Source of the DNA: Salisapilia sapeloensis CBS 127946 | Lineage: Eukaryota > Protista > Oomycota | Reading direction: 5' to 3' | Assembly: GCA_023334545.1 (NCBI GenBank) | Contig: JAADVB010000008.1 | Coordinates: 62,001-126,000, forward strand | Length of the DNA: 64,000 nt | Shown here: positions 20,885 to 28,640 of the stretch, piece by piece | How the letters are laid out: the number at the start of each line of letters is the position of its first letter | Position numbering within the stretch: the stretch's first letter is position 1 | Notes under the pieces: model-generated | The model's input: only the letters and a program-made list of their open reading frames with translations | The model's database searches: none | What the model was told of the DNA's origin: nothing | Program-made: the position numbers and the translations under genes

Positions 20885-22149
20885 ATGGCGGAGGCAGCAC
20901 AAGAGATGAAGCTACGAGGGTATGCGTTTTACAAAGCGATTGGAAGTCCATCTCGGATTGTCGCTCCAATGGTACCTACCCTGACTTTATACTAGCATTG
21001 AACAACAGTAACATGCAAGAAGGTCGATCAATCGGAATTGGCATTCCGAATGCTTTCCCGGCGATACGGCGGACAATTGTGCTATACGCCCATGTTCCAC
21101 AGCAGATTGTTTGCTGAAAGTGAAGACTACCGGAACAAGATGATGGAAGTTCATGCTCAAGACCGACCATTAGTCGTACAGGTACAACTTGCGAGACTAG
21201 AATTATCAGATGTGCGTATTGCAAATGTTAAACAAATTATTTTCATCTAGTTTTGTGGCAACGATCCACAGACGATGTTGGCAGCCGCCAAGCACGTCGA
21301 GTCTCAATGTGACGCTGTAGATCTCAACCTCGGATGTCCTCAGGTACATGAACTTCCAAATTACCACAGCAAATTATAAACTTATCTTTTGTCTAGGGCA
21401 TTGCTCGTAAAGGCCGATACGGCTCGTTCCTAATGAAAGAAAAGGATGTCGTTCGTGAAATTGTTAAGCTGCTCAGCCAGGAACTGTCTGTGCCAGTGAC
21501 TGTCAAAATTCGTGTCTTCCCAGACCGTCAAGAGACGCTGGAGTTTTGTGACATGCTACAGGAAGCAGGCTGTGACCTCTTGACCGTTCACGGTCGTACG
21601 AAAGAGATGAATAAGACGGCTGTCCGAGAAGTTGATCTGGACATTATTCGAGAGATCAAGTCTCGACTACAAATCCCAGTCATCTTGAACGGCGGCATCG
21701 AGACGTATGACGACATTGAAATGTCGTTAAAGCGAACTGGTGCCGATGGTGTCATGAGTTCGGAAGCTATTTTAGAAAACCCAGCTCTTTTCTCTGGCAA
21801 AAACCCCATCTACGACTCGGACGTGTCGTACTTGTCCATGGCAAGAGAGTACCTCGATCTCTCCGACGAGTTCCCTCCTTACACGAACAAGATCGTGCGA
21901 GCTCACTTATTCAAGATCCTTGCGCAGGACCTCGCGAAACATTCTGATCTTCGTCCGCAACTAGCTCAATCCAGTAGCGTCCTAGAGATGAAGGATGTGG
22001 TGGATGAATTAGAGAACCGACAGGATCCACCGACGTACAGTCTAGAGAATAGCTGGTACCGTCGGCATCGCAAGGCGCGACAGTTAGAAGAGGAAAAAGA
22101 CGCGTATGAGCACGTGCTGGACACTGGTTTCGGCGCCTTATTCAACTAA
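20885..22149 (+). CDS. DUS1: tRNA-dihydrouridine(16/17) synthase
   Basis: Spliced IVAPM|[16 protein letters not shown]...[27 protein letters not shown] (catalytic Cys), VTVKIR, LTVHGR, NGGI and DGVMSSE. Confidence 0.93.
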
Positions 22150-22183
22150 CACGAAAGTTCGTTTCAAGCCTACGTCTACTTTA

Positions 22184-25100
22184 TTACTGGAGACCCATGC
22201 CCCATCCAAGTTTCTGTCTCTTTTCCTTGCGTTCATTTTCTTCTTCCACGTCAAACCTTACCGATGCAGGCCGAGTCGGACGCAGCGCAGCAGGCAGAGG
22301 TGGCGCTTCCTCCATCTCCACATCGTTCTTCGCACGTGAATTCGCTTCCGTATTCTCCCTCGTCGTATCACTATCGGACGATTTATCCTTTTCTTTCTTT
22401 CTTTCCTCCCCTCTCTTCCCTCGATGTTTCTCAAGAGCTAAGAAGCGTTTGCGCTGGTCGTGGAACGTATCGTCCAAGGTCGAAAAGTCTACTTGATCTA
22501 CATGCGCAAAGAACGGAAGCTCTAGTAGTTTCTTGACGCTCAGACGTTTCATCGGATCCAACTGCAGCATGTGCTCAATCAAGTCTCTCGCATCTTGTGG
22601 TAACGTCGACTTGTCATGCCTGTCGCGATGCTCATCCAAAGCTTTATGCAGGCGAGGCTTGTATTCTTGCTTAGGTTTACTACGTCCGTATCGAGGGAAT
22701 TTCATACCGTCAGGCCACACGGTCTTGGGGCTACCACACAACCGGAAGATGCGATCCAATTGGGACTTGGCATCTGATCCACGCATCCAGCTCGTCGAGT
22801 CCGTTAGTAGTTGAAGCGTAAGACATCCGAGTGCCCAGACATCTCCTCTCCATGTGAAATTCATTTCTCCTAACAGCACTTCTGGAGACGTGAAGTGCAC
22901 CCAAGCTCCGGCACTCATCTCTCGTCGTTCATTCTCACTTAGAGTATAGCTCTGCAGCTCCTTTTTATCTTTGCTCGCCACACTTACTCGACGCATGGTA
23001 TGGTATCCACTTAGCTTTGCACCGTGTTTCATGAGGAAGACGTTCGTAGGTGCGACATATCGATGGACGATACTCTGGTCATGCAAGACGTTGAGTGCCT
23101 GGAAGACATCGTACAGCACCTTTTTCTTCTGTGCCATATTCACCGTCACTTTGCTTTCGATTAGAGAAGAGTACATGTGTAGAGGTTGTTCTAGCGCCAT
23201 GTAATGTGCCTTACGATCTAGTATACTTTCGTTTTCTGCTGCTGCTGTATCATCTATGGATGGGAAGATGATACCGACTGGACTTGGAAAGTGTTCAGAC
23301 GAGATAGAGGAGAGTGTGAGTGCTGAACTAAGCTCTCTTAACGCATCAACGGAGAAACCTTTTTCATCTACACCGGAGTGAATGCCAGTCTCTCGATACG
23401 GCCATGGCTGTAACCAGACTGATTTCCCAGCGATATCCATCGATAAGGTCTTATCGATGGACCCAATAAAGTTTTTCTTCTTTAGCTGCATCAAGTTCGT
23501 CACTTGGTCAGCACAAATCTTATCACTACCATCGTTGATATGCATCACATCCATGGCGTTTGGTGTTATTTGCCTGTCAATTGTTGAAAAGGAAGTAGAT
23601 GCACGTAAGAATGCATCTAAAGTGAACGGTGTGTGTGACTTGTAGCCTTCTCCCTTCGTCCATTGCGATAGCAAGGATGAAATACGTTCGTGAATATCTC
23701 CTTTCGGTCCATCAACAGCAAACTGGTCAACGTCAAACTCTTCCAACGTCTCACCATCCTTCTTCTTCATCTCCTGTCGTCGATACCGATCTGCTGCATC
23801 TTGACAGAGTGCTACGCAACACTTGTGGAGCTCCATCTGACCTGAGGCTAAGACTGGCAAATAGACAGGTATACTATCGTCCTTTGTCCCATCCAACGCG
23901 ACGTGAGCGGCTGCACTCACGTAGACGATAGCGAGGACGACACAAGGTATTGTCGCATGCTGCCACACTGGAAGCGCAAAAGCTTCCGAGAGCAGATGCT
24001 TTGCTTCCTTTTGTACTTCGACAGGTGGGAGTGTCGATGGGAACATCGAGTTAAGCAGATCTTCCGGTACGATCCGCCGTCGATGCTTGTCTGACACGAG
24101 AACATCTAGTAAGATGTACGGGTCATGCGTTCGAAAGTCAAAATGCAATCCTTCGAGGATATGACGTTCTTGCTTGAGAATTTGCTTTTGGAAATGCGCT
24201 AGTTCCTTCGAGTCGGACGCAATGTCGACGTTATGCTTTCGCTTGTAAGCTTGTTGCACGAGTGCATTGAACTGAAAACGACGACTATGAGCTTTCAATT
24301 GCATGTGCAAGAGACTTATACCTGTGATCTCCACTTCATTCACGTTCATCGGACGAACAGACAGGAAGCGATGGAAGGCCAGGATGGCACTCGTCGCGTC
24401 TTCTCTCGCGAGACGCAAGGCTTTCGCGACGTGGAGAACCGTACGCACCGTCTGTGATCGCATCCGAGCTTCTAGTTTGATCGAAACGCCGCTCGTCCGT
24501 CGTCTCTCTTCCCACTCTTCCTCCGATACGATCCAATCGAGCGGTCGACCGTAGCCATAAGGTCGAATGACGACCTTGTCTTCCACAAATTCACTCTGTC
24601 TCGACTCGTACAATTGCTTTTCCATTCGTTTCTGTGCCGCCAATCGCTTCGTGGTTTCAAACTTTTGAATACCTGCAGAAGCGACGCAAAAGACACGCAA
24701 GAGACCATCGAGAAGAGGTCGGTTATGTAGTTTACCACGAAAGCGAGACAAGTACTTGTCATCTATAAACTCTACGAGTGCCCACCCTTGTCCGTCGTCA
24801 AAGGAAAAATAGTCCAAGTGTTTTACTGGATGGATGACACTCTCATCGTTCTTCCGCTTGAGCTGTGCTTCGATACTTTTCGAAGGACGATGACGGATCG
24901 TAAAGAGTTCTCGAAGCATATCTTCATCACATTTCGCCGGAATGTGTTTAATCATGAGTTTCGTCGCTTTTTCACCATGTTCGTCGTAGAGAGAAAAGGA
25001 TGGCGACGGGAGGGATGGAGATGGTGTGGCAGATGATGTCGAAACAGGGGTTTCGGTCGGTGAAGACTGCATGGTGGAGGTTGAGACGATCGGGACTTGT

Positions 25101-26375
25101 TTCTTCGGAATGGAAAACACTTGCTTTTGGATCTCATCCTTGGATAGACCCTCGAACGAGACGTAAATGTTCCATTCAGACGCAGACAGATCGATCCATC
25201 GTCGATTCGATCGACTTTCCATGTCCACGTCGTCTAGAGGAGATTCTTCTCCCGACAAATCGTCTTCCAACTCGATCTGGTGCTTCCCACTTGCTGCATC
25301 ATACTTTCGCACATTCCCACTGCGATACATGGCTTCTCCTGGCATAGGTTCATACACTCGAATGCGTCTACCAACGATCTTCTCTGCTGTCTCATCCACG
25401 AGTGCATCTCGATAAAACCCTTTCTGCGCCTCATTCTCGACCGTATCTCCTTCCGTACCAATGATCCCTTTGCATTTACTTGTACCACAAAAGCATTTAA
25501 TCTGACGTGACCCGAGTGCTTTCCATTGATAGTCAAACGTAATTTCTTCATTCGGACCGATGGGACGTAAGGCAAAGACACCGATGCGTGTATCGTTACC
25601 GACTGTCCACTTCTCCGTCGTGCAGTTTGGATCACAACTATGGTTTACGAATCGTGTTAAACTACCCTTGTTCCGCGCGTCAATGTAGATCCCAGGCTCG
25701 AGCATGAGGTAGTAAAAGTTTAGTTCATGACGAGGAACGGTGCTAAGCCGTCGCTTAAGCTCCTTCTGATCAATTATCTCGCCTACATACTCGCCCACGA
25801 TACTTGCTTTCGAGATCGAGTCTAGCGTACGCACACCAAATCCCTTCTTTTCCGTCTACATGGCACGAGTTAGACTATGTTTTCCTAAAGGACAAAGATA
25901 CACTAGCCTGACGACAATACGACATCATTCATATACAACGAAGAAGAAATAGTACAAGTACCTTGAAAGCTTCTAGTTGAGGAAACTTTTCCGGGTGCTG
26001 GAGTCGTTGGTTCTTACAAAATGGACCTGCATCACAGTTCGGTGGACACTCTACGTACGTTGCGAAATTGAGGCACGAGACGTCGTTGCAGCGATCCGTG
26101 TCAGTGTCGTCTTCGTCTGGTCGGTCACAATAGCACTTGGCGCCGAGTTCGTCGCCAGATTCATCATCTTTCCCAAAGCCATCGTCATCTGCGTCCCGTA
26201 CTCGACGACGGACGTCCGATCGAGTCAAACGGTCGAGCGGATACTCGTTCCGTTCAATTAAACGTACGTGGCGAAAGGCTTCCAATGTTTCTGCACTGAC
26301 GCTCTCGTTGACCTCGACGTTGTCACTCTTACGGACATTAGCATCAGGAGGACTATGTGTGTGGCTTGAGAGCAT
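22184..26375 (-). CDS. AWS-SET-postSET (Set2/NSD/ASH1 class) + Tudor-like + RRM-like + cyclin T/K-like + CDK9/12-like pseudokinase fusion
   Basis: Exon 26375-25962, intron 25961-25856, then one uninterrupted reading frame to 22184. SET: RFVNHSCDPN, EEITFDY, CFCGTSKC. Cyclin: AILAFHRFL, QERHILEGLHFDF. Kinase: GFSVDALRE, SPEVLLG, DVWALGC, QLDRIFRLCGSP, LQLDPMKRLS. Confidence 0.88.
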
Positions 26376-26678
26376 CGTTGTGGTGGACGAAAGGATAGGA
26401 TGGACGCACGAAAGGCTAGCTCAGACTGGGAGGACGTCAAGCTGGAGTATTCCAGTTGTATTGTGGCGCGACTCCAGTCGAGTATATTTCTAGCCGCAAT
26501 TGGAAAAGTATGTGCAAATAAAGCACACAAAGAATTGGTTGTTTATGGTGGGTTGCCGTTAACTCGGCAGCTGTCGAGTTTGAAAATTACGTTAAAGTGG
26601 CTATAAATGGAATAAATGGTGGAGTAAGGATAGTTTGATATGTTGGCATCGAGATTTCTCTACCTCTATCGCTATCTC

Positions 26679-28640
26679 CTATGCGCCATACTTGAATTGG
26701 AAAGTGAAATCGACACCTAGAGGATGCATAGAAAACTTACTACGAAAGGAATTTATGTCAGGTCATGCAAACGTACCAAAGTGGACAAGTGTGTACTGTA
26801 AGACGTAAATGACCCAGACGAGAAGGCGACCTTGTACTTCCTCTGCCTGGTTCTCCAACACAAAAGATAAGAGGTAGATGGGAGAGTACCCAAACATGGG
26901 CTTTAAAGTCCAATGTAAAAGCAAGAAGGGAAGCGCTCCTAGGATGGCGTAGATGGTAATGTTGAAGTTTGTCCACCATAGTTGCTGCACGTCCATTTGC
27001 TCAAAGCGAGGGTAGTAGACAGCATTTGGAAGGGTGTAGAGGATGTTTGTATAAACAAGGTAGAGAAGTGGAATGATGCACTCGACGTACTCTACCAGGA
27101 CAAGGTATTCTGTCTGAAACAGAAGCTGAAGTGTATCTTCCACCAATTCCGTTTGCACATCGGTAACTTCAGTTTTACCACGTCTCTGAACAACAGATTC
27201 ACTTTGACCGTCAATGTGAGTGTTTGTTTGTGTCCTTTGATCTCTATTGGTGCTACGAGAACTTGGCTTAGTATCGCTGTCCCTTTTAATGCTCTTCTCG
27301 TTTGTAGACGTCTCAGACCGATCAATGTTTGTATCTTTACGATTCCAGACCCGATCTGATTCTGAAGCAGAGTTCGTGCATGAAGCAAGTTCTGATGGAA
27401 ACAGTTTTACAGAGCTTGGCTTTGAGAGGTCTTCATGGGTAGATGAACCAAACGATGGACGCACACGCTTGATATCTGACAGGACGCGAATCTTCGAGCC
27501 TGCTATAGCTTTCTTCACAAAGCTTTTGGTTTGTGCTATTATAGTGATTTCCGCTAGCAGTGTCGAAGCCTTTCTGGATGTGTTACCACAAAATACAGTT
27601 TGTTGAATGGTAAGTGCCTTCAGACGAAGTTGGTAGACGGCAAAGATTGATAGAGTCGCATCCGAGCATATCATGCCGATTGTCGCCATGGTACTCGACG
27701 CCCTATCTAGACAGGTCGCGACGAAGAGGGCATTAAAGATCTAAGACCGAAGAATTGAAGTAAGAGAGCAATGTAATACACAAAGGTATAACGTACAGCT
27801 TACCTCGACACTGAAGACAATGAGTTCTGGTAGTGAATCTTCAACGTACGAACCAGCAAGGGCAATGATATTCTTCATCAGGACTTTTATAAGAGGTAGT
27901 AGTCCGACCAAATAGATTTGGTTTTCAGGAGATGCTTGTTCGAAAACAGCTCCGAATGATGAATAGATGATAATAAGACTACCTTGTATTGCAATAACAA
28001 GATATTGCTTGTGAATAGCTTGACGTAAAGATGGTGTCGACACAATCCTGCGAAAACCCACCATGGCAGCAAAGTACACGGCGACGAAGAAGCAGTAAGG
28101 CCCTGCAAGCAGAACGACACCAAAAGGGACAGGAAAGCGCCACACAATTGCAATTACCATATACACTGCAACGTAGCTCAACCCTGTCAATACGGCCATC
28201 ACTGCTTTTCCTTCAAAAGATATGTCGCAATCCGGCAGTAGTGGAGGAATCTGTAAAGCTACCCCGAAAGAAGTTGGAAATGCGATCCAGAACGCTCGCA
28301 TCCAAAATGCCCAGTTTCCATTCCAGTCATCATTTGGATGCTGCAACTGTAAAAATTCGATGCCTAGTACACAGACCAAAGCCGGTAGTGGTGTCAAAAG
28401 GCAAGCGATAACAATCTTTAACCGAGAAGTTGTTTTGCTGTACGTTATAGTTTCTTCCAGCCTTGCAAGGGAAACAGTACCACGCGTACTAATTTCCACT
28501 CGTTCCCAAGTTTGATACACGAGCGTTGCCATGTCCAAGACGAACGTGTACACTGATCGCTTCTTCCTCGGCATAACAACTGGCTTGAGGTCATTTTCGC
28601 TCGGAATAACAACATTCTTTTTTAATACCTTCGTTGTCAT
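26679..28640 (-). CDS. Oomycete-family multi-pass transmembrane protein
   Basis: ORFs 27741-28640 and 26763-27689 join by an intron (SVE|IFNALFVATCL), with a small last exon GVDFTFQFKYGA. Family motifs IACLLTPLPAL, WNGNWAFWMR, LFQTEYLVLVEYVECIIP and YSPIYLLSFVLENQ. Confidence 0.75.

What the first reader, a model, noticed from the sequence alone, without database searches (positions are those of the whole stretch)
22184..26375. One polypeptide fuses an H3K36-class methyltransferase with a cyclin T/K-like and a CDK9/12-like module
Seen: after one intron, a single stop-free frame carries AWS-SET-postSET (about 26140-25460), a Tudor-like barrel (about 25385-25200), an RRM-like domain (about 24970-24700), two cyclin folds (about 24510-23850) and a kinase fold (about 23500-22460). 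The kinase alphaC reads EKGFSVDALRE, comparable to KEGFPITALRE of CDK9. Established: Set2 is recruited by Pol II CTD Ser2 phosphorylation made by CDK9/cyclin T and CDK12/cyclin K (Ctk1/Bur1 in yeast), normally as separate proteins. Inference: a hard-wired transcription-elongation chromatin module in which an intramolecular cyclin-CDK pair targets or regulates the SET domain. I cannot tell whether this architecture has been described.
Basis: partly seen in the sequence, partly recalled or inferred. Interest (0 to 1): 0.82.

Follow-up and report, generated by a model that had tools for sequence, protein, structure and literature searches.

The report
Set2-type methyltransferase fused to dead cyclin-CDK pair
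This oomycete gene makes one 1361-residue protein that joins a histone H3K36-type methyltransferase to a Tudor-like barrel, an RRM, a cyclin T/K-like domain and a CDK12-like kinase that has lost its catalytic residues; the fusion is real and conserved from oomycetes to diatoms, was noted briefly in 2010, and has no known function.

Summary
On the minus strand, exon 1 (26375-25962), a 106-nt GT..AG intron and exon 2 (25855-22184) encode one 1361-aa protein. Transcript contigs from two RNA runs span the whole gene with the intron removed.

Domains found:
- AWS-SET-postSET, closest to SETD2 (3e-38)
- a Tudor-like barrel (weak support)
- an RRM (VIA Z up to 12.5)
- a cyclin box (family profile to cyclin T2 at 6.6e-10, cyclin K at 6e-7)
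- a CDK fold, closest to CDK12/13 (4e-24)

The kinase is a pseudokinase: the glycine loop, the beta3 lysine, the HRD aspartate and the DFG aspartate are all replaced, here and in every relative examined.

The architecture is not new. Judelson and Ah-Fong (2010) described an inactive CDK-like kinase fused to a histone methyltransferase in Phytophthora, and databases name the orthologues "CMGC/CDK protein kinase".

I found three points in no paper of the searched library. The cyclin lies inside the protein. The fusion occurs across oomycetes and in diatoms. Some environmental variants carry CCCH+KH where this protein has the RRM.

My working mechanism, which is inferred, is that the docked cyclin-pseudokinase pair is a non-catalytic targeting module. 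It may stand in for the missing SRI domain that normally tethers Set2 to RNA polymerase II.

The parts
26376..26445 (-). 5' untranslated region
   Evidence: The RNA contigs extend to 26445 (X1) and 26436 (X3), upstream of the ATG at 26375.
25962..26375 (-). Exon 1, residues 1-138: N-terminal region and AWS cysteine cluster
   Evidence: ORF list and translation. The N-terminus aligns with the orthologues.
25995..26135 (-). AWS domain (residues about 81-127)
   Evidence: Pfam AWS 2.6e-7. AWS is also found in 9 of 11 family members.
25856..25961 (-). Intron, 106 nt, GT..AG
   Evidence: Sequence. It is skipped exactly in the RNA contigs of runs X1 and X3.
22184..25855 (-). Exon 2, residues 139-1361 plus the stop codon
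   Evidence: Single stop-free frame, covered by one contig in each of two runs.
25526..25843 (-). SET domain, with NHSC and the catalytic Tyr of FDY intact
   Evidence: Pfam SET 7.5e-24. Closest solved structure is SETD2, 3e-38. N71, H72, S73, C74 and Y109 are invariant in the family.
25457..25507 (-). post-SET cysteine cluster (CFCGTSKCKG)
   Evidence: It aligns to the SETD2 post-SET. C121, C123 and C128 are invariant.
25157..25420 (-). Tudor-like beta-barrel
   Evidence: AF2 strands at exon-2 residues 146-233, pLDDT about 80-90. Profile match to the 7de9_A Tudor at E 0.0044. PF21743 at 2.6e-4, below Pfam's cut-off, in relative P0176. Atlas leads point to Tudor families. Support is weak.
24680..24967 (-). 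RRM fold (beta-alpha-beta-beta-alpha-beta) with an inserted loop and helix
   Evidence: VIA top 50 matches are all RRMs, Z 9.6-12.5, over model residues about 293-400. Profile to NONO RRM1 at 2.4e-4. Topology seen in the AF2 model.
23750..24523 (-). Cyclin T/K-like domain (first cyclin box certain, second box helical and probable)
   Evidence: Pfam Cyclin_N 1.1e-6. Profile matches cyclin T2 at 6.6e-10, T1 at 7.6e-8, K at 6e-7, then L. AF2 helices 16-273 of the model.
22454..23542 (-). CDK12-like pseudokinase domain
   Evidence: phmmer to CDK12/13 at 4e-24. Foldseek TM 0.76-0.81 to CDK12. VIA Z 26.5 to CDK9. Catalytic motifs are replaced.
23396..23419 (-). VWLQPWPY, the family signature [LM]Q.WP where active CDKs have the beta3 VALKK lysine
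   Evidence: Alignments with active CDKs. L, Q, W, P and Y are invariant in oomycetes, and the signature is shared with diatom relatives.
23333..23365 (-). alphaC (PSTAIRE-equivalent) helix EKGFSVDALRE, with the alphaC Glu retained
   Evidence: E412 is invariant.
23042..23068 (-). Degenerate catalytic loop VHRYVAPTN (HRD to HRY; catalytic-loop Lys to Ala)
   Evidence: Alignment with CDK12 and with CDK representatives.
22991..23017 (-). Degenerate DFG segment KLSGYHTMR (DFG to GYH)
22187..22222 (-). C-terminal motif KRQKLGWGMGLQ, of unknown role
   Evidence: Nearly invariant in the Phytophthora, Pythium and Albugo relatives. Absent from Saprolegniales and diatoms.
22163..22183 (-). Very short 3' untranslated region
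   Evidence: The RNA contigs end at 22175 (X1) and 22163 (X3).

Best explanation
Shown. The locus is one spliced gene for a 1361-aa nuclear-type protein. Its domains, in order, are:
- a catalytically intact SETD2/NSD-class AWS-SET-postSET methyltransferase
- a Tudor-like barrel
- an RRM
- a cyclin T/K-like domain
- a CDK12-like kinase fold that lacks the ATP-binding and catalytic residues (a pseudokinase)

The protein has been inherited vertically since before oomycetes and diatoms diverged, and it is under purifying selection.

Inferred. The cyclin domain binds the pseudokinase within the same chain, as a cyclin binds a CDK. Together they form a rigid, non-catalytic binding platform. The platform most likely uses the substrate-docking side inherited from a CDK12-cyclin K ancestor to hold the enzyme on the RNA polymerase II elongation machinery, that is, the CTD or a neighbouring elongation factor. 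This would replace the SRI domain, which the protein lacks. The RRM would add contact with nascent RNA, and the Tudor-like barrel would add contact with methylated histone tails. H3K36 methylation would then be laid down co-transcriptionally without any phosphorylation by the fused kinase.

I am about 95% confident in the 'what it is' part and about 35-40% confident in the CTD/elongation-docking mechanism. The confidence figure given is for the mechanism in its general form: a non-catalytic targeting module for the SET domain.
For: One transcript. Spliced contigs of 4165 and 4168 nt from two runs span the whole ORF.

Domain identities.

Intact SET. The NHSC motif, the catalytic Tyr and the post-SET cysteines are invariant.

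Dead kinase. The glycine loop, beta3 Lys, HRD Asp and DFG Asp are replaced in all oomycete, diatom and environmental relatives. The alphaC Glu, APE-LLG, DxWxxGC and the CMGC insert are retained.

Retained cyclin-CDK interface elements. The alphaC helix is among the conserved blocks. The cyclin-box Lys that aligns with the cyclin K 'AGKVEE' lysine is invariant.

Docking. The AF2 model of cyclin plus kinase has pTM 0.63 even though 204 of 794 residues are disordered. The three N-terminal domains modelled together give only 0.35. This is consistent with a confidently packed cyclin-kinase pair.

No SRI. No SRI or WW hit was found in any member scanned. [quoted passage not shown]

Constraint. There are 19 synonymous against 4 non-synonymous differences to a related organism, spread over all domains. 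The gene tree follows the species tree from diatoms to Phytophthora.

RNA-binding position. An RNA-binding module always sits between the SET/Tudor part and the cyclin. It is an RRM here and CCCH+KH in the variants P0176 and P0197.
Against: - No binding partner was tested or could be tested here.
- I could not read the AF2 inter-domain error map or coordinates, so canonical cyclin-CDK docking is inferred from pTM and conserved motifs only.
- The T-loop and the alphaC arginine are not conserved across the family, so a CDK-like phospho-dependent substrate site is not evident.
- Absence of SRI from whole stramenopile proteomes was not tested by me. It rests on one paper's statement about P. sojae.
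- H3K36 specificity is inferred from similarity to SETD2/NSD.
- The MSA used for the models had only 11 sequences.
Confidence: 0.5

Rival explanations
1. The cyclin-pseudokinase pair is an internal regulator of the SET domain. It would act as an autoinhibitory or allosteric clamp, comparable in role to the autoinhibitory region between SET and SRI in yeast Set2, and would not be a targeting module.
For: - It lies in the same position, C-terminal to SET, as the regulatory middle region of Set2.
- Pseudokinases often act allosterically (general knowledge).
- The whole chain is conserved as a unit.
Against: - The N-terminal model gives no confident packing of SET against other domains (pTM 0.35).
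- Long disordered linkers separate SET from the cyclin.
- A roughly 700-residue two-domain module that keeps CDK and cyclin surface features is more than a clamp needs.
- This reading is not exclusive of the targeting model.
Confidence: 0.2
2. The module works independently of polymerase docking, as a decoy or scaffold. It would bind regulators of the genuine CDK12-cyclin K or CDK9-cyclin T kinases (activating kinase, inhibitors, adaptor proteins) or some unrelated partner, bringing them to H3K36-methylated chromatin or sequestering them.
For: - The C-lobe and CMGC insert, which are typical regulator-binding surfaces, are conserved.
- Different short C-terminal motifs occur in different lineages: KLGWGMGL in peronosporomycetes, LYD[ML]DD in diatoms and basic tails in Saprolegniales. 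This suggests lineage-specific partners.
Against: There is no direct evidence. It does not explain why the fusion partner is always a Set2-class SET together with an RNA-binding domain.
Confidence: 0.15
3. The kinase is active by a non-canonical mechanism, so the protein is a true self-contained cyclin-CDK that phosphorylates the CTD and methylates H3K36.
For: - The fold is complete, with Z 26.5 to CDK9.
- The alphaC Glu and the APE motif are retained.
- A few kinases, such as the WNKs, work with displaced catalytic residues (general knowledge).
Against: - All four elements are lost at once: the glycine loop, the beta3 Lys, the HRD Asp and the DFG Asp.
- The catalytic-loop Lys is also lost, as is the catalytic-loop Asn in Phytophthora (VAPSH).
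- The replacements differ between lineages at the former catalytic Asp (Y, F, S, T, V, N, M), which argues against a new conserved catalytic residue.
- Judelson and Ah-Fong reached the same conclusion for the Phytophthora protein.
Confidence: 0.03
4. The single long protein is an artefact, either an assembly join or two adjacent genes read through.
For: None found. The only caveat is that the RNA evidence consists of assembled contigs, which cannot exclude additional shorter isoforms.
Against: - Two runs each give one spliced contig that ends at the gene's two ends.
- More than 20 collinear full-length relatives exist in oomycetes and diatoms.
- The frame is stop-free for 1223 codons.
Confidence: 0.02

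Closest known systems
Phytophthora infestans PITG_14137 and its orthologues (e.g. P. sojae PHYSODRAFT_565808), named 'CMGC/CDK protein kinase' in databases; noted in Judelson & Ah-Fong 2010, BMC Genomics 11:700
   Same: It has the same architecture and is collinear over the full length, at 37-41% identity to the Phytophthora, Pythium and Peronospora proteins. The kinase is inactive in both, and both carry an N-terminal histone-lysine methyltransferase.
   Different: The window's protein comes from a deep peronosporomycete branch outside Pythium plus Phytophthora. The paper mentions neither the internal cyclin nor the Tudor or RRM, and it states that orthologues are limited to three Phytophthora species. 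Here they appear in Albugo, Saprolegniales, Pythium, downy mildews and diatoms. I did not retrieve the PITG_14137 sequence itself, so the link rests on the paper's description and on the P. sojae orthologue.
Set2 / SETD2 (KMT3) H3K36 methyltransferases
   Same: The AWS-SET-postSET core is present. SETD2 is the best solved match at 3e-38, and all catalytic and zinc-binding residues are kept.
   Different: There is no SRI domain and no WW domain. Instead the protein carries a Tudor-like barrel, an RRM, a cyclin and a pseudokinase.
Human CDK12/CDK13-cyclin K and CDK9-cyclin T (P-TEFb) complexes
   Same: The kinase fold is closest to CDK12/13 and the cyclin is closest to cyclins T, K and L. The PSTAIRE-equivalent helix and the cyclin-box lysine are kept.
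   Different: Here the two are domains of one chain, in the order cyclin then kinase. The kinase is catalytically dead, and the activation loop carries an insertion of about 8-9 residues.
The four P. infestans CDKs with C-terminal cyclin domains (e.g. PITG_21617; Judelson & Ah-Fong 2010)
   Same: A CDK-like domain and a cyclin domain lie in one polypeptide, and the kinase is probably inactive.
   Different: The domain order is the opposite (kinase then cyclin). The substitution is a single Asp-to-Asn change rather than loss of all the motifs. There is no SET domain. These proteins were not compared by sequence here.
PsKMT3 (Ps_130312), the characterised H3K36me3 methyltransferase of P. sojae (PMC10013772)
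   Same: It is an oomycete KMT3-family AWS-SET enzyme without SRI.
   Different: It is a different paralogue, with an AWS-SET plus PHD architecture, no cyclin and no kinase, and no Albugo member in its clade. Its knock-out leaves about half of H3K36me3 in place, so another enzyme must exist. The protein family studied here is a candidate for that enzyme, but this is an inference.
SETD1A/Set1 RRM-containing methyltransferases
   Same: A SET-domain histone methyltransferase carries an RRM. The SETD1A RRM is the second-best structural match to this RRM (Z 11.7).
   Different: The SET class differs (H3K4, not H3K36), and so do the domain order and the rest of the architecture.

Membership tests
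Set2/SETD2-NSD (KMT3) methyltransferases | AWS-SET-postSET catalytic core | tested here: met
   Pfam AWS 2.6e-7 and SET 1.6e-21. SETD2 at 3e-38 and NSD1/3 at about 3e-36.
Set2/SETD2-NSD (KMT3) methyltransferases | Cofactor and catalytic residues (NHSC, Tyr of FDY) and post-SET cysteines | tested here: met
   They are invariant in 11 aligned family members and aligned to SETD2.
Set2/SETD2-NSD (KMT3) methyltransferases | SRI domain binding phosphorylated Pol II CTD (defines Set2/SETD2 proper) | tested here: not met
   No PF08236 hit in the window protein or in any relative scanned.
Set2/SETD2-NSD (KMT3) methyltransferases | Methylation of H3K36 | not testable with these tools
   This needs an enzyme assay or ChIP after knock-out.
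Transcriptional cyclins (T/K/L) | Cyclin-box fold, N-terminal repeat | tested here: met
   Pfam Cyclin_N 1.1e-6, above the cut-off. The family profile matches cyclin T2 at 6.6e-10, T1 at 7.6e-8 and K at 6e-7.
Transcriptional cyclins (T/K/L) | Second cyclin-box repeat | tested here: inconclusive
   The AF2 model has a second helical bundle (model helices 150-273). Only the cyclin L1 alignment reaches profile position 220. No structural match was listed, because kinase hits filled the tables.
Transcriptional cyclins (T/K/L) | Binds and activates a CDK | not testable with these tools
   The conserved cyclin-box Lys and the conserved alphaC helix, together with pTM 0.63, suggest binding. Activation is moot for a dead kinase.
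Cyclin-dependent kinases (CMGC; CDK12/13/9 branch) | Protein kinase fold with the CMGC insert, closest to CDKs | tested here: met
   CDK12/13 at 4e-24. Foldseek TM 0.76-0.81. VIA Z 26.5, and six of the eight best-scoring chains are CDK or CDK-related.
Cyclin-dependent kinases (CMGC; CDK12/13/9 branch) | Catalytic residues: GxGxxG, beta3 Lys, HRD Asp, DFG Asp | tested here: not met
   GSIDKT, VWLQPW, HRY and GYH stand at the aligned positions. This holds for the whole family. The domain is therefore a pseudokinase and not an active CDK.
Cyclin-dependent kinases (CMGC; CDK12/13/9 branch) | PSTAIRE-type alphaC helix with the conserved Glu | tested here: met
   GFSVDALRE aligns to GFPITAIRE, and the Glu is invariant.
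Stramenopile SET-cyclin-pseudoCDK fusion (PITG_14137 type) | Set2-class SET at the N-terminus and an inactive CDK-like domain at the C-terminus of one protein | tested here: met
   description in PMC3019232.
Stramenopile SET-cyclin-pseudoCDK fusion (PITG_14137 type) | Full-length collinear orthology, including the signature [LM]Q.WP in place of the beta3 lysine motif | tested here: met
   Alignments A1 and A2. The motif is shared with diatom proteins.
RRM domains | beta-alpha-beta-beta-alpha-beta fold | tested here: met
   AF2 topology. VIA Z up to 12.5, and all 50 top hits are RRMs. Profile E 2.4e-4.
RRM domains | Aromatic RNP1/RNP2 residues for RNA binding | tested here: inconclusive
   The RNP1-like GQGWALVEF keeps an invariant Trp and a Phe. 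The RNP2-like KLMIKHIP has no aromatic residue. RNA binding cannot be decided from this.
Tudor / PTM-DIR17-like Tudor domains | Five-stranded barrel with sequence similarity to Tudor families | tested here: inconclusive
   Profile to 7de9_A at E 0.0044. PF21743 at 2.6e-4, below the cut-off, in P0176. Atlas scores of only 0.67. A confident barrel in AF2. No structural match was listed for this part.

The most novel reading that the evidence does not exclude
Stramenopiles couple H3K36 methylation to transcription by a route not described elsewhere. An RNA-binding domain (an RRM, or CCCH+KH) senses the nascent transcript.
Probability: 0.3. Interest if true: 0.8.

Novelty: new member of a known kind. 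Interest (0 to 1): 0.55.

Why it matters
How Set2-type enzymes follow RNA polymerase II is a central question in chromatin biology, and the SRI domain is the textbook answer. Oomycetes are reported to lack SRI, yet they have gene-body H3K36me3, and about half of it survives loss of the one enzyme studied so far (PsKMT3).

This family is a candidate for the missing activity. It also offers a natural experiment: a kinase-cyclin pair that normally writes the CTD code has been turned into a non-catalytic appendage of the enzyme that normally reads that code.

The fusion is present in major crop and fish pathogens (Phytophthora, Albugo, Saprolegnia, Aphanomyces) and in diatoms, so it is experimentally accessible. 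It is one of few documented cyclin-bound CDK pseudokinases, which makes it useful for understanding what CDK folds do apart from catalysis.

Tried and rejected
1. Foldseek and VIA searches with the two multi-domain AF2 models. Kinase hits and SET or RRM hits filled the tables. No structural match could therefore be listed for the cyclin repeats or the Tudor-like barrel, and I used profile searches instead.

2. Direct check of cyclin-kinase docking geometry. The tools give no coordinates or error map, so only pTM could be used.

3. Naming the lineage that carries the CCCH+KH variant. A word-index search with P0176 returned only one unnamed metagenome protein and a fish CDK12. Cluster members carry only MMETSP transcript numbers.

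4. Literature searches. I searched for oomycete and diatom descriptions of the fusion, the locus tags, and pseudokinase surveys. Only the two sentences in PMC3019232 turned up. The diatom SETD2 survey (PMC10421102) reports unexplained conserved motifs IV-VII and never mentions a kinase.

5. An active-kinase reading. Rejected on motif evidence.

6. A gene-fusion artefact. Rejected on RNA and orthologue evidence.

7. Earlier scan notes. A search by words for SET, SRI and related terms gave nothing.

8. Not attempted:
- a proteome-wide SRI search in stramenopiles
- a phylogeny placing the pseudokinase among CDK subfamilies
- retrieval of the PITG_14137 sequence itself

Full report
**Gene model and transcript**

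The minus strand between 26375 and 22184 holds two ORF pieces. Reading the sequence and translating it gives the following model:
- Exon 1 runs from 26375 to 25962 and encodes 138 codons from the ATG.
- The intron runs from 25961 to 25856. It is 106 nt long, starts GTACTT and ends CATGTAG.
- Exon 2 runs from 25855 to 22184 and encodes 1223 codons plus the stop.

The protein is 1361 aa.

Public runs that hold this sequence were found and laid on 21300-27200. In each of two runs a single contig (4165 and 4168 nt) covers 22175/22163-25855 joined directly to 25962-26445/26436. The 106 nt are skipped with CT..AC ends on the plus strand, which is GT..AG on the gene's strand. The convergent neighbour, a dihydrouridine synthase gene, lies on a separate contig with its own 53-nt intron. 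The long frame is therefore one spliced mRNA and not an assembly join. Assembled contigs cannot exclude additional shorter isoforms.

**Domains**

Pfam calls four domains: AWS in exon 1 at 2.6e-7, and in exon 2 SET at 1.6e-21, Cyclin_N at 1.1e-6 and Pkinase at 2.7e-21. The Pkinase match covers only profile positions 70-263.

Comparison with solved structures gives the following:
- The SET part is closest to SETD2 (3e-38), followed by NSD1/NSD3 and ASH1L. This is the H3K36 class.
- The kinase part is closest to CDK12 and CDK13 (4e-24 to 4e-23), well ahead of CDK2 at 1.5e-17.
- The cyclin part alone matches only cyclin K, and weakly (0.027). A profile of 11 family members matches cyclin T2 (6.6e-10), T1 (7.6e-8), K (6e-7) and L.

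An AF2 model of cyclin plus kinase plus tail has pTM 0.63. Foldseek puts CDK12/13 chains in its first 38 places, with TM 0.74-0.81 normalised to the target. VIA-align gives Z 26.5 to CDK9, and six of the eight best-scoring chains are CDK or CDK-related.

An AF2 model of the N-terminal 430 residues of exon 2 has pTM 0.35. The SET domain is poorly modelled because AWS is missing from it. It shows two confident small domains:
- A beta-barrel at exon-2 residues 146-233.
- A beta-alpha-beta-beta-alpha-beta unit at residues 299-391.

The second unit is an RRM. All 50 best VIA matches are RRMs, with Z 9.6-12.5, and they include the RRM of SETD1A. The family profile also matches NONO RRM1 at 2.4e-4, followed by dozens of other RRMs.

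The barrel has weaker support as a Tudor. The evidence is a profile match to the small Tudor chain 7de9_A at E 0.0044, a sub-threshold PF21743 match in a distant relative and low-scoring Atlas leads to Tudor families.

**The kinase is dead**

I aligned the kinase region with active CDK representatives returned by the profile search. One of these, P0059, reads the same as the human CDK12 chain shown over nearly all of the aligned stretch. The alignments show these replacements:
- Glycine loop: GEGTYG becomes GSIDKT.
- beta3: VALKK becomes VWLQPW, so there is no lysine.
- Catalytic loop: HRDIKCSN becomes HRYVAPTN.
- DFG becomes GYH.

Several features are retained: the alphaC helix (GFSVDALRE against GFPITAIRE) with its Glu, APE followed by LLGE, DxWxxGC, the CMGC-insert block CGSP..WP, and LDPxKR.

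The same pattern holds in every relative. The former catalytic Asp is Y, F, S, T, V, N or M depending on lineage, which argues against a relocated catalytic residue. This agrees with another first-stage note on the same stretch (s1-282431) and with the published judgement on the Phytophthora protein.

**Relatives and history**

A word-index search found full-length collinear relatives at 32-41% identity in the following genera:
- Phytophthora (several species) and Nothophytophthora
- Peronospora and Bremia
- Pythium
- Saprolegnia
- Albugo

They are aligned. Most are named "CMGC/CDK protein kinase".

A profile search of 1.84 billion representatives gave orthologues down to about 1e-100, then ordinary CDKs from about 1e-37. 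Looking up names added Globisporangium, Achlya, Thraustotheca and Aphanomyces.

More distant proteins have the same SET...Cyclin_N...pseudokinase order in two diatoms: Fistulifera solaris, where the protein is annotated SETD2, and Chaetoceros debilis. Many unnamed environmental sequences share that order as well.

A further variant (P0176 and P0197, on metatranscriptome-like contigs) reads AWS-SET-Tudor-CCCH-KH-cyclin-pseudokinase.

All share the odd [LM]Q.WP motif where the beta3 lysine should be. This marks a single origin.

A maximum-likelihood tree separates the diatom group, one unnamed sequence, Saprolegniales, and a 98/99-supported clade containing the window's protein, Albugo, Pythium and Phytophthora. 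The window's protein is a deep branch in that last clade. The gene tree therefore follows the organisms, and the fusion predates the split of oomycetes and diatoms.

Contigs from a related organism differ from the window at 23 listed sites in the gene, of which 19 are synonymous. This shows purifying selection across all the domains sampled, including the cyclin and the pseudokinase.

**What was already known**

Judelson and Ah-Fong (2010, PMC3019232) wrote that PITG_14137 is a CDK-like gene with inactivating substitutions. [quoted passage not shown] They list one SET domain among the accessory domains of CMGC kinases. They describe cyclin domains only in four other CDKs, where the order is the opposite.

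No other paper in the searched library mentions the locus.

The PsKMT3 study (PMC10013772) characterises a different AWS-SET-PHD paralogue. [quoted passage not shown]

A diatom SETD2 survey (PMC10421102) reports extra conserved motifs of unknown meaning and does not mention a kinase.

The family is therefore known, but only barely. The cyclin inside it, its breadth across stramenopiles, and the constant presence of an RNA-binding domain appear in no paper of the searched library.

**Mechanism**

Shown:
- The SET core is intact.
- No SRI or WW domain is present.
- The CDK fold is dead, with a conserved C-lobe and alphaC helix.
- The cyclin box has an invariant lysine at the position of the CDK-contacting lysine of cyclin K.
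- The pTM fits a packed cyclin-kinase body.

Inferred: the pair forms an intramolecular cyclin-CDK-like complex that acts by binding. My preferred partner is the Pol II CTD or the elongation machinery. There are three reasons. The ancestor was a CTD kinase pair. The fusion partner is always a Set2-class enzyme. And the usual CTD-binding SRI domain is missing.

This is a hypothesis, which I rate at about 35-40% for the specific partner and about 50% for "non-catalytic targeting module" in general.

Rivals are an autoinhibitory clamp on SET (about 20%), a scaffold or decoy for other partners (about 15%), a non-canonical active kinase (about 3%) and an artefact (about 2%).

**Unexplained**

The C-terminal KR.KLGWGMGL motif is nearly invariant in the Phytophthora, Pythium and Albugo relatives and in the window. 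Diatoms have an acidic LYD[ML]DD motif instead, and Saprolegniales have basic tails. AF2 leaves the tail disordered.

**Verdict**

The gene is a new member of a known but almost uncharacterised family. Interest is moderate to high, because the family offers a testable alternative to SRI-based coupling of H3K36 methylation to transcription.

Noticed in passing
window 21300-22149 (+): A convergent neighbour gene encodes a dihydrouridine synthase (Pfam Dus 3.6e-37). RNA contigs confirm a 53-nt intron at 21342-21394. Its stop codon lies only about 34 nt from the stop of the SET gene, so the two 3' ends almost touch.
   Followed up: partly
window 26763-27689 (-): A 308-aa ORF upstream of the SET gene has no Pfam match. 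It also has no coverage in the two RNA runs that cover the SET gene well (depth 0 from 26619 to 27200).
   Followed up: partly
L001:148-6066 (+), protein P0176; also P0197, P0108: An environmental variant of the family has a CCCH zinc finger and a KH domain where the oomycete protein has an RRM: AWS-SET-Tudor-CCCH-KH-cyclin-pseudokinase, 1972-2470 aa. The organism is unknown. Cluster members carry only MMETSP transcript numbers.
   Followed up: partly
Proteins P0107/P0204 (Fistulifera solaris) and P0201 (Chaetoceros debilis): Diatom proteins annotated as SETD2 carry the same cyclin and pseudokinase. They end in an acidic LYD[ML]DD motif followed by a basic tail, where the peronosporomycete proteins have KLGWGMGL. 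A diatom SETD2 survey lists unexplained conserved motifs IV-VII, which may correspond to these domains.
   Followed up: partly
window 22187-22222 (-): The C-terminal KRQKLGWGMGLQ motif is nearly invariant in the Phytophthora, Pythium and Albugo relatives. It is disordered in the AF2 model, and no function is known or suggested by any search.
   Followed up: partly
Activation loop, window about 22892-22990 (-): The residue aligned with the CDK T-loop threonine is Thr here (SYT). It is Glu in Phytophthora (AYE), and Ala or Val in Saprolegnia and Albugo. The loop also carries an insertion of about 8-9 residues in the oomycete members.
   Followed up: no
P0035 (Thraustotheca clavata, 1832 aa): In this record the family member has an extra N-terminal TPR region and is named 'CCR4-NOT transcription complex subunit'. 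It is probably a gene-model merge with the upstream gene.
   Followed up: no
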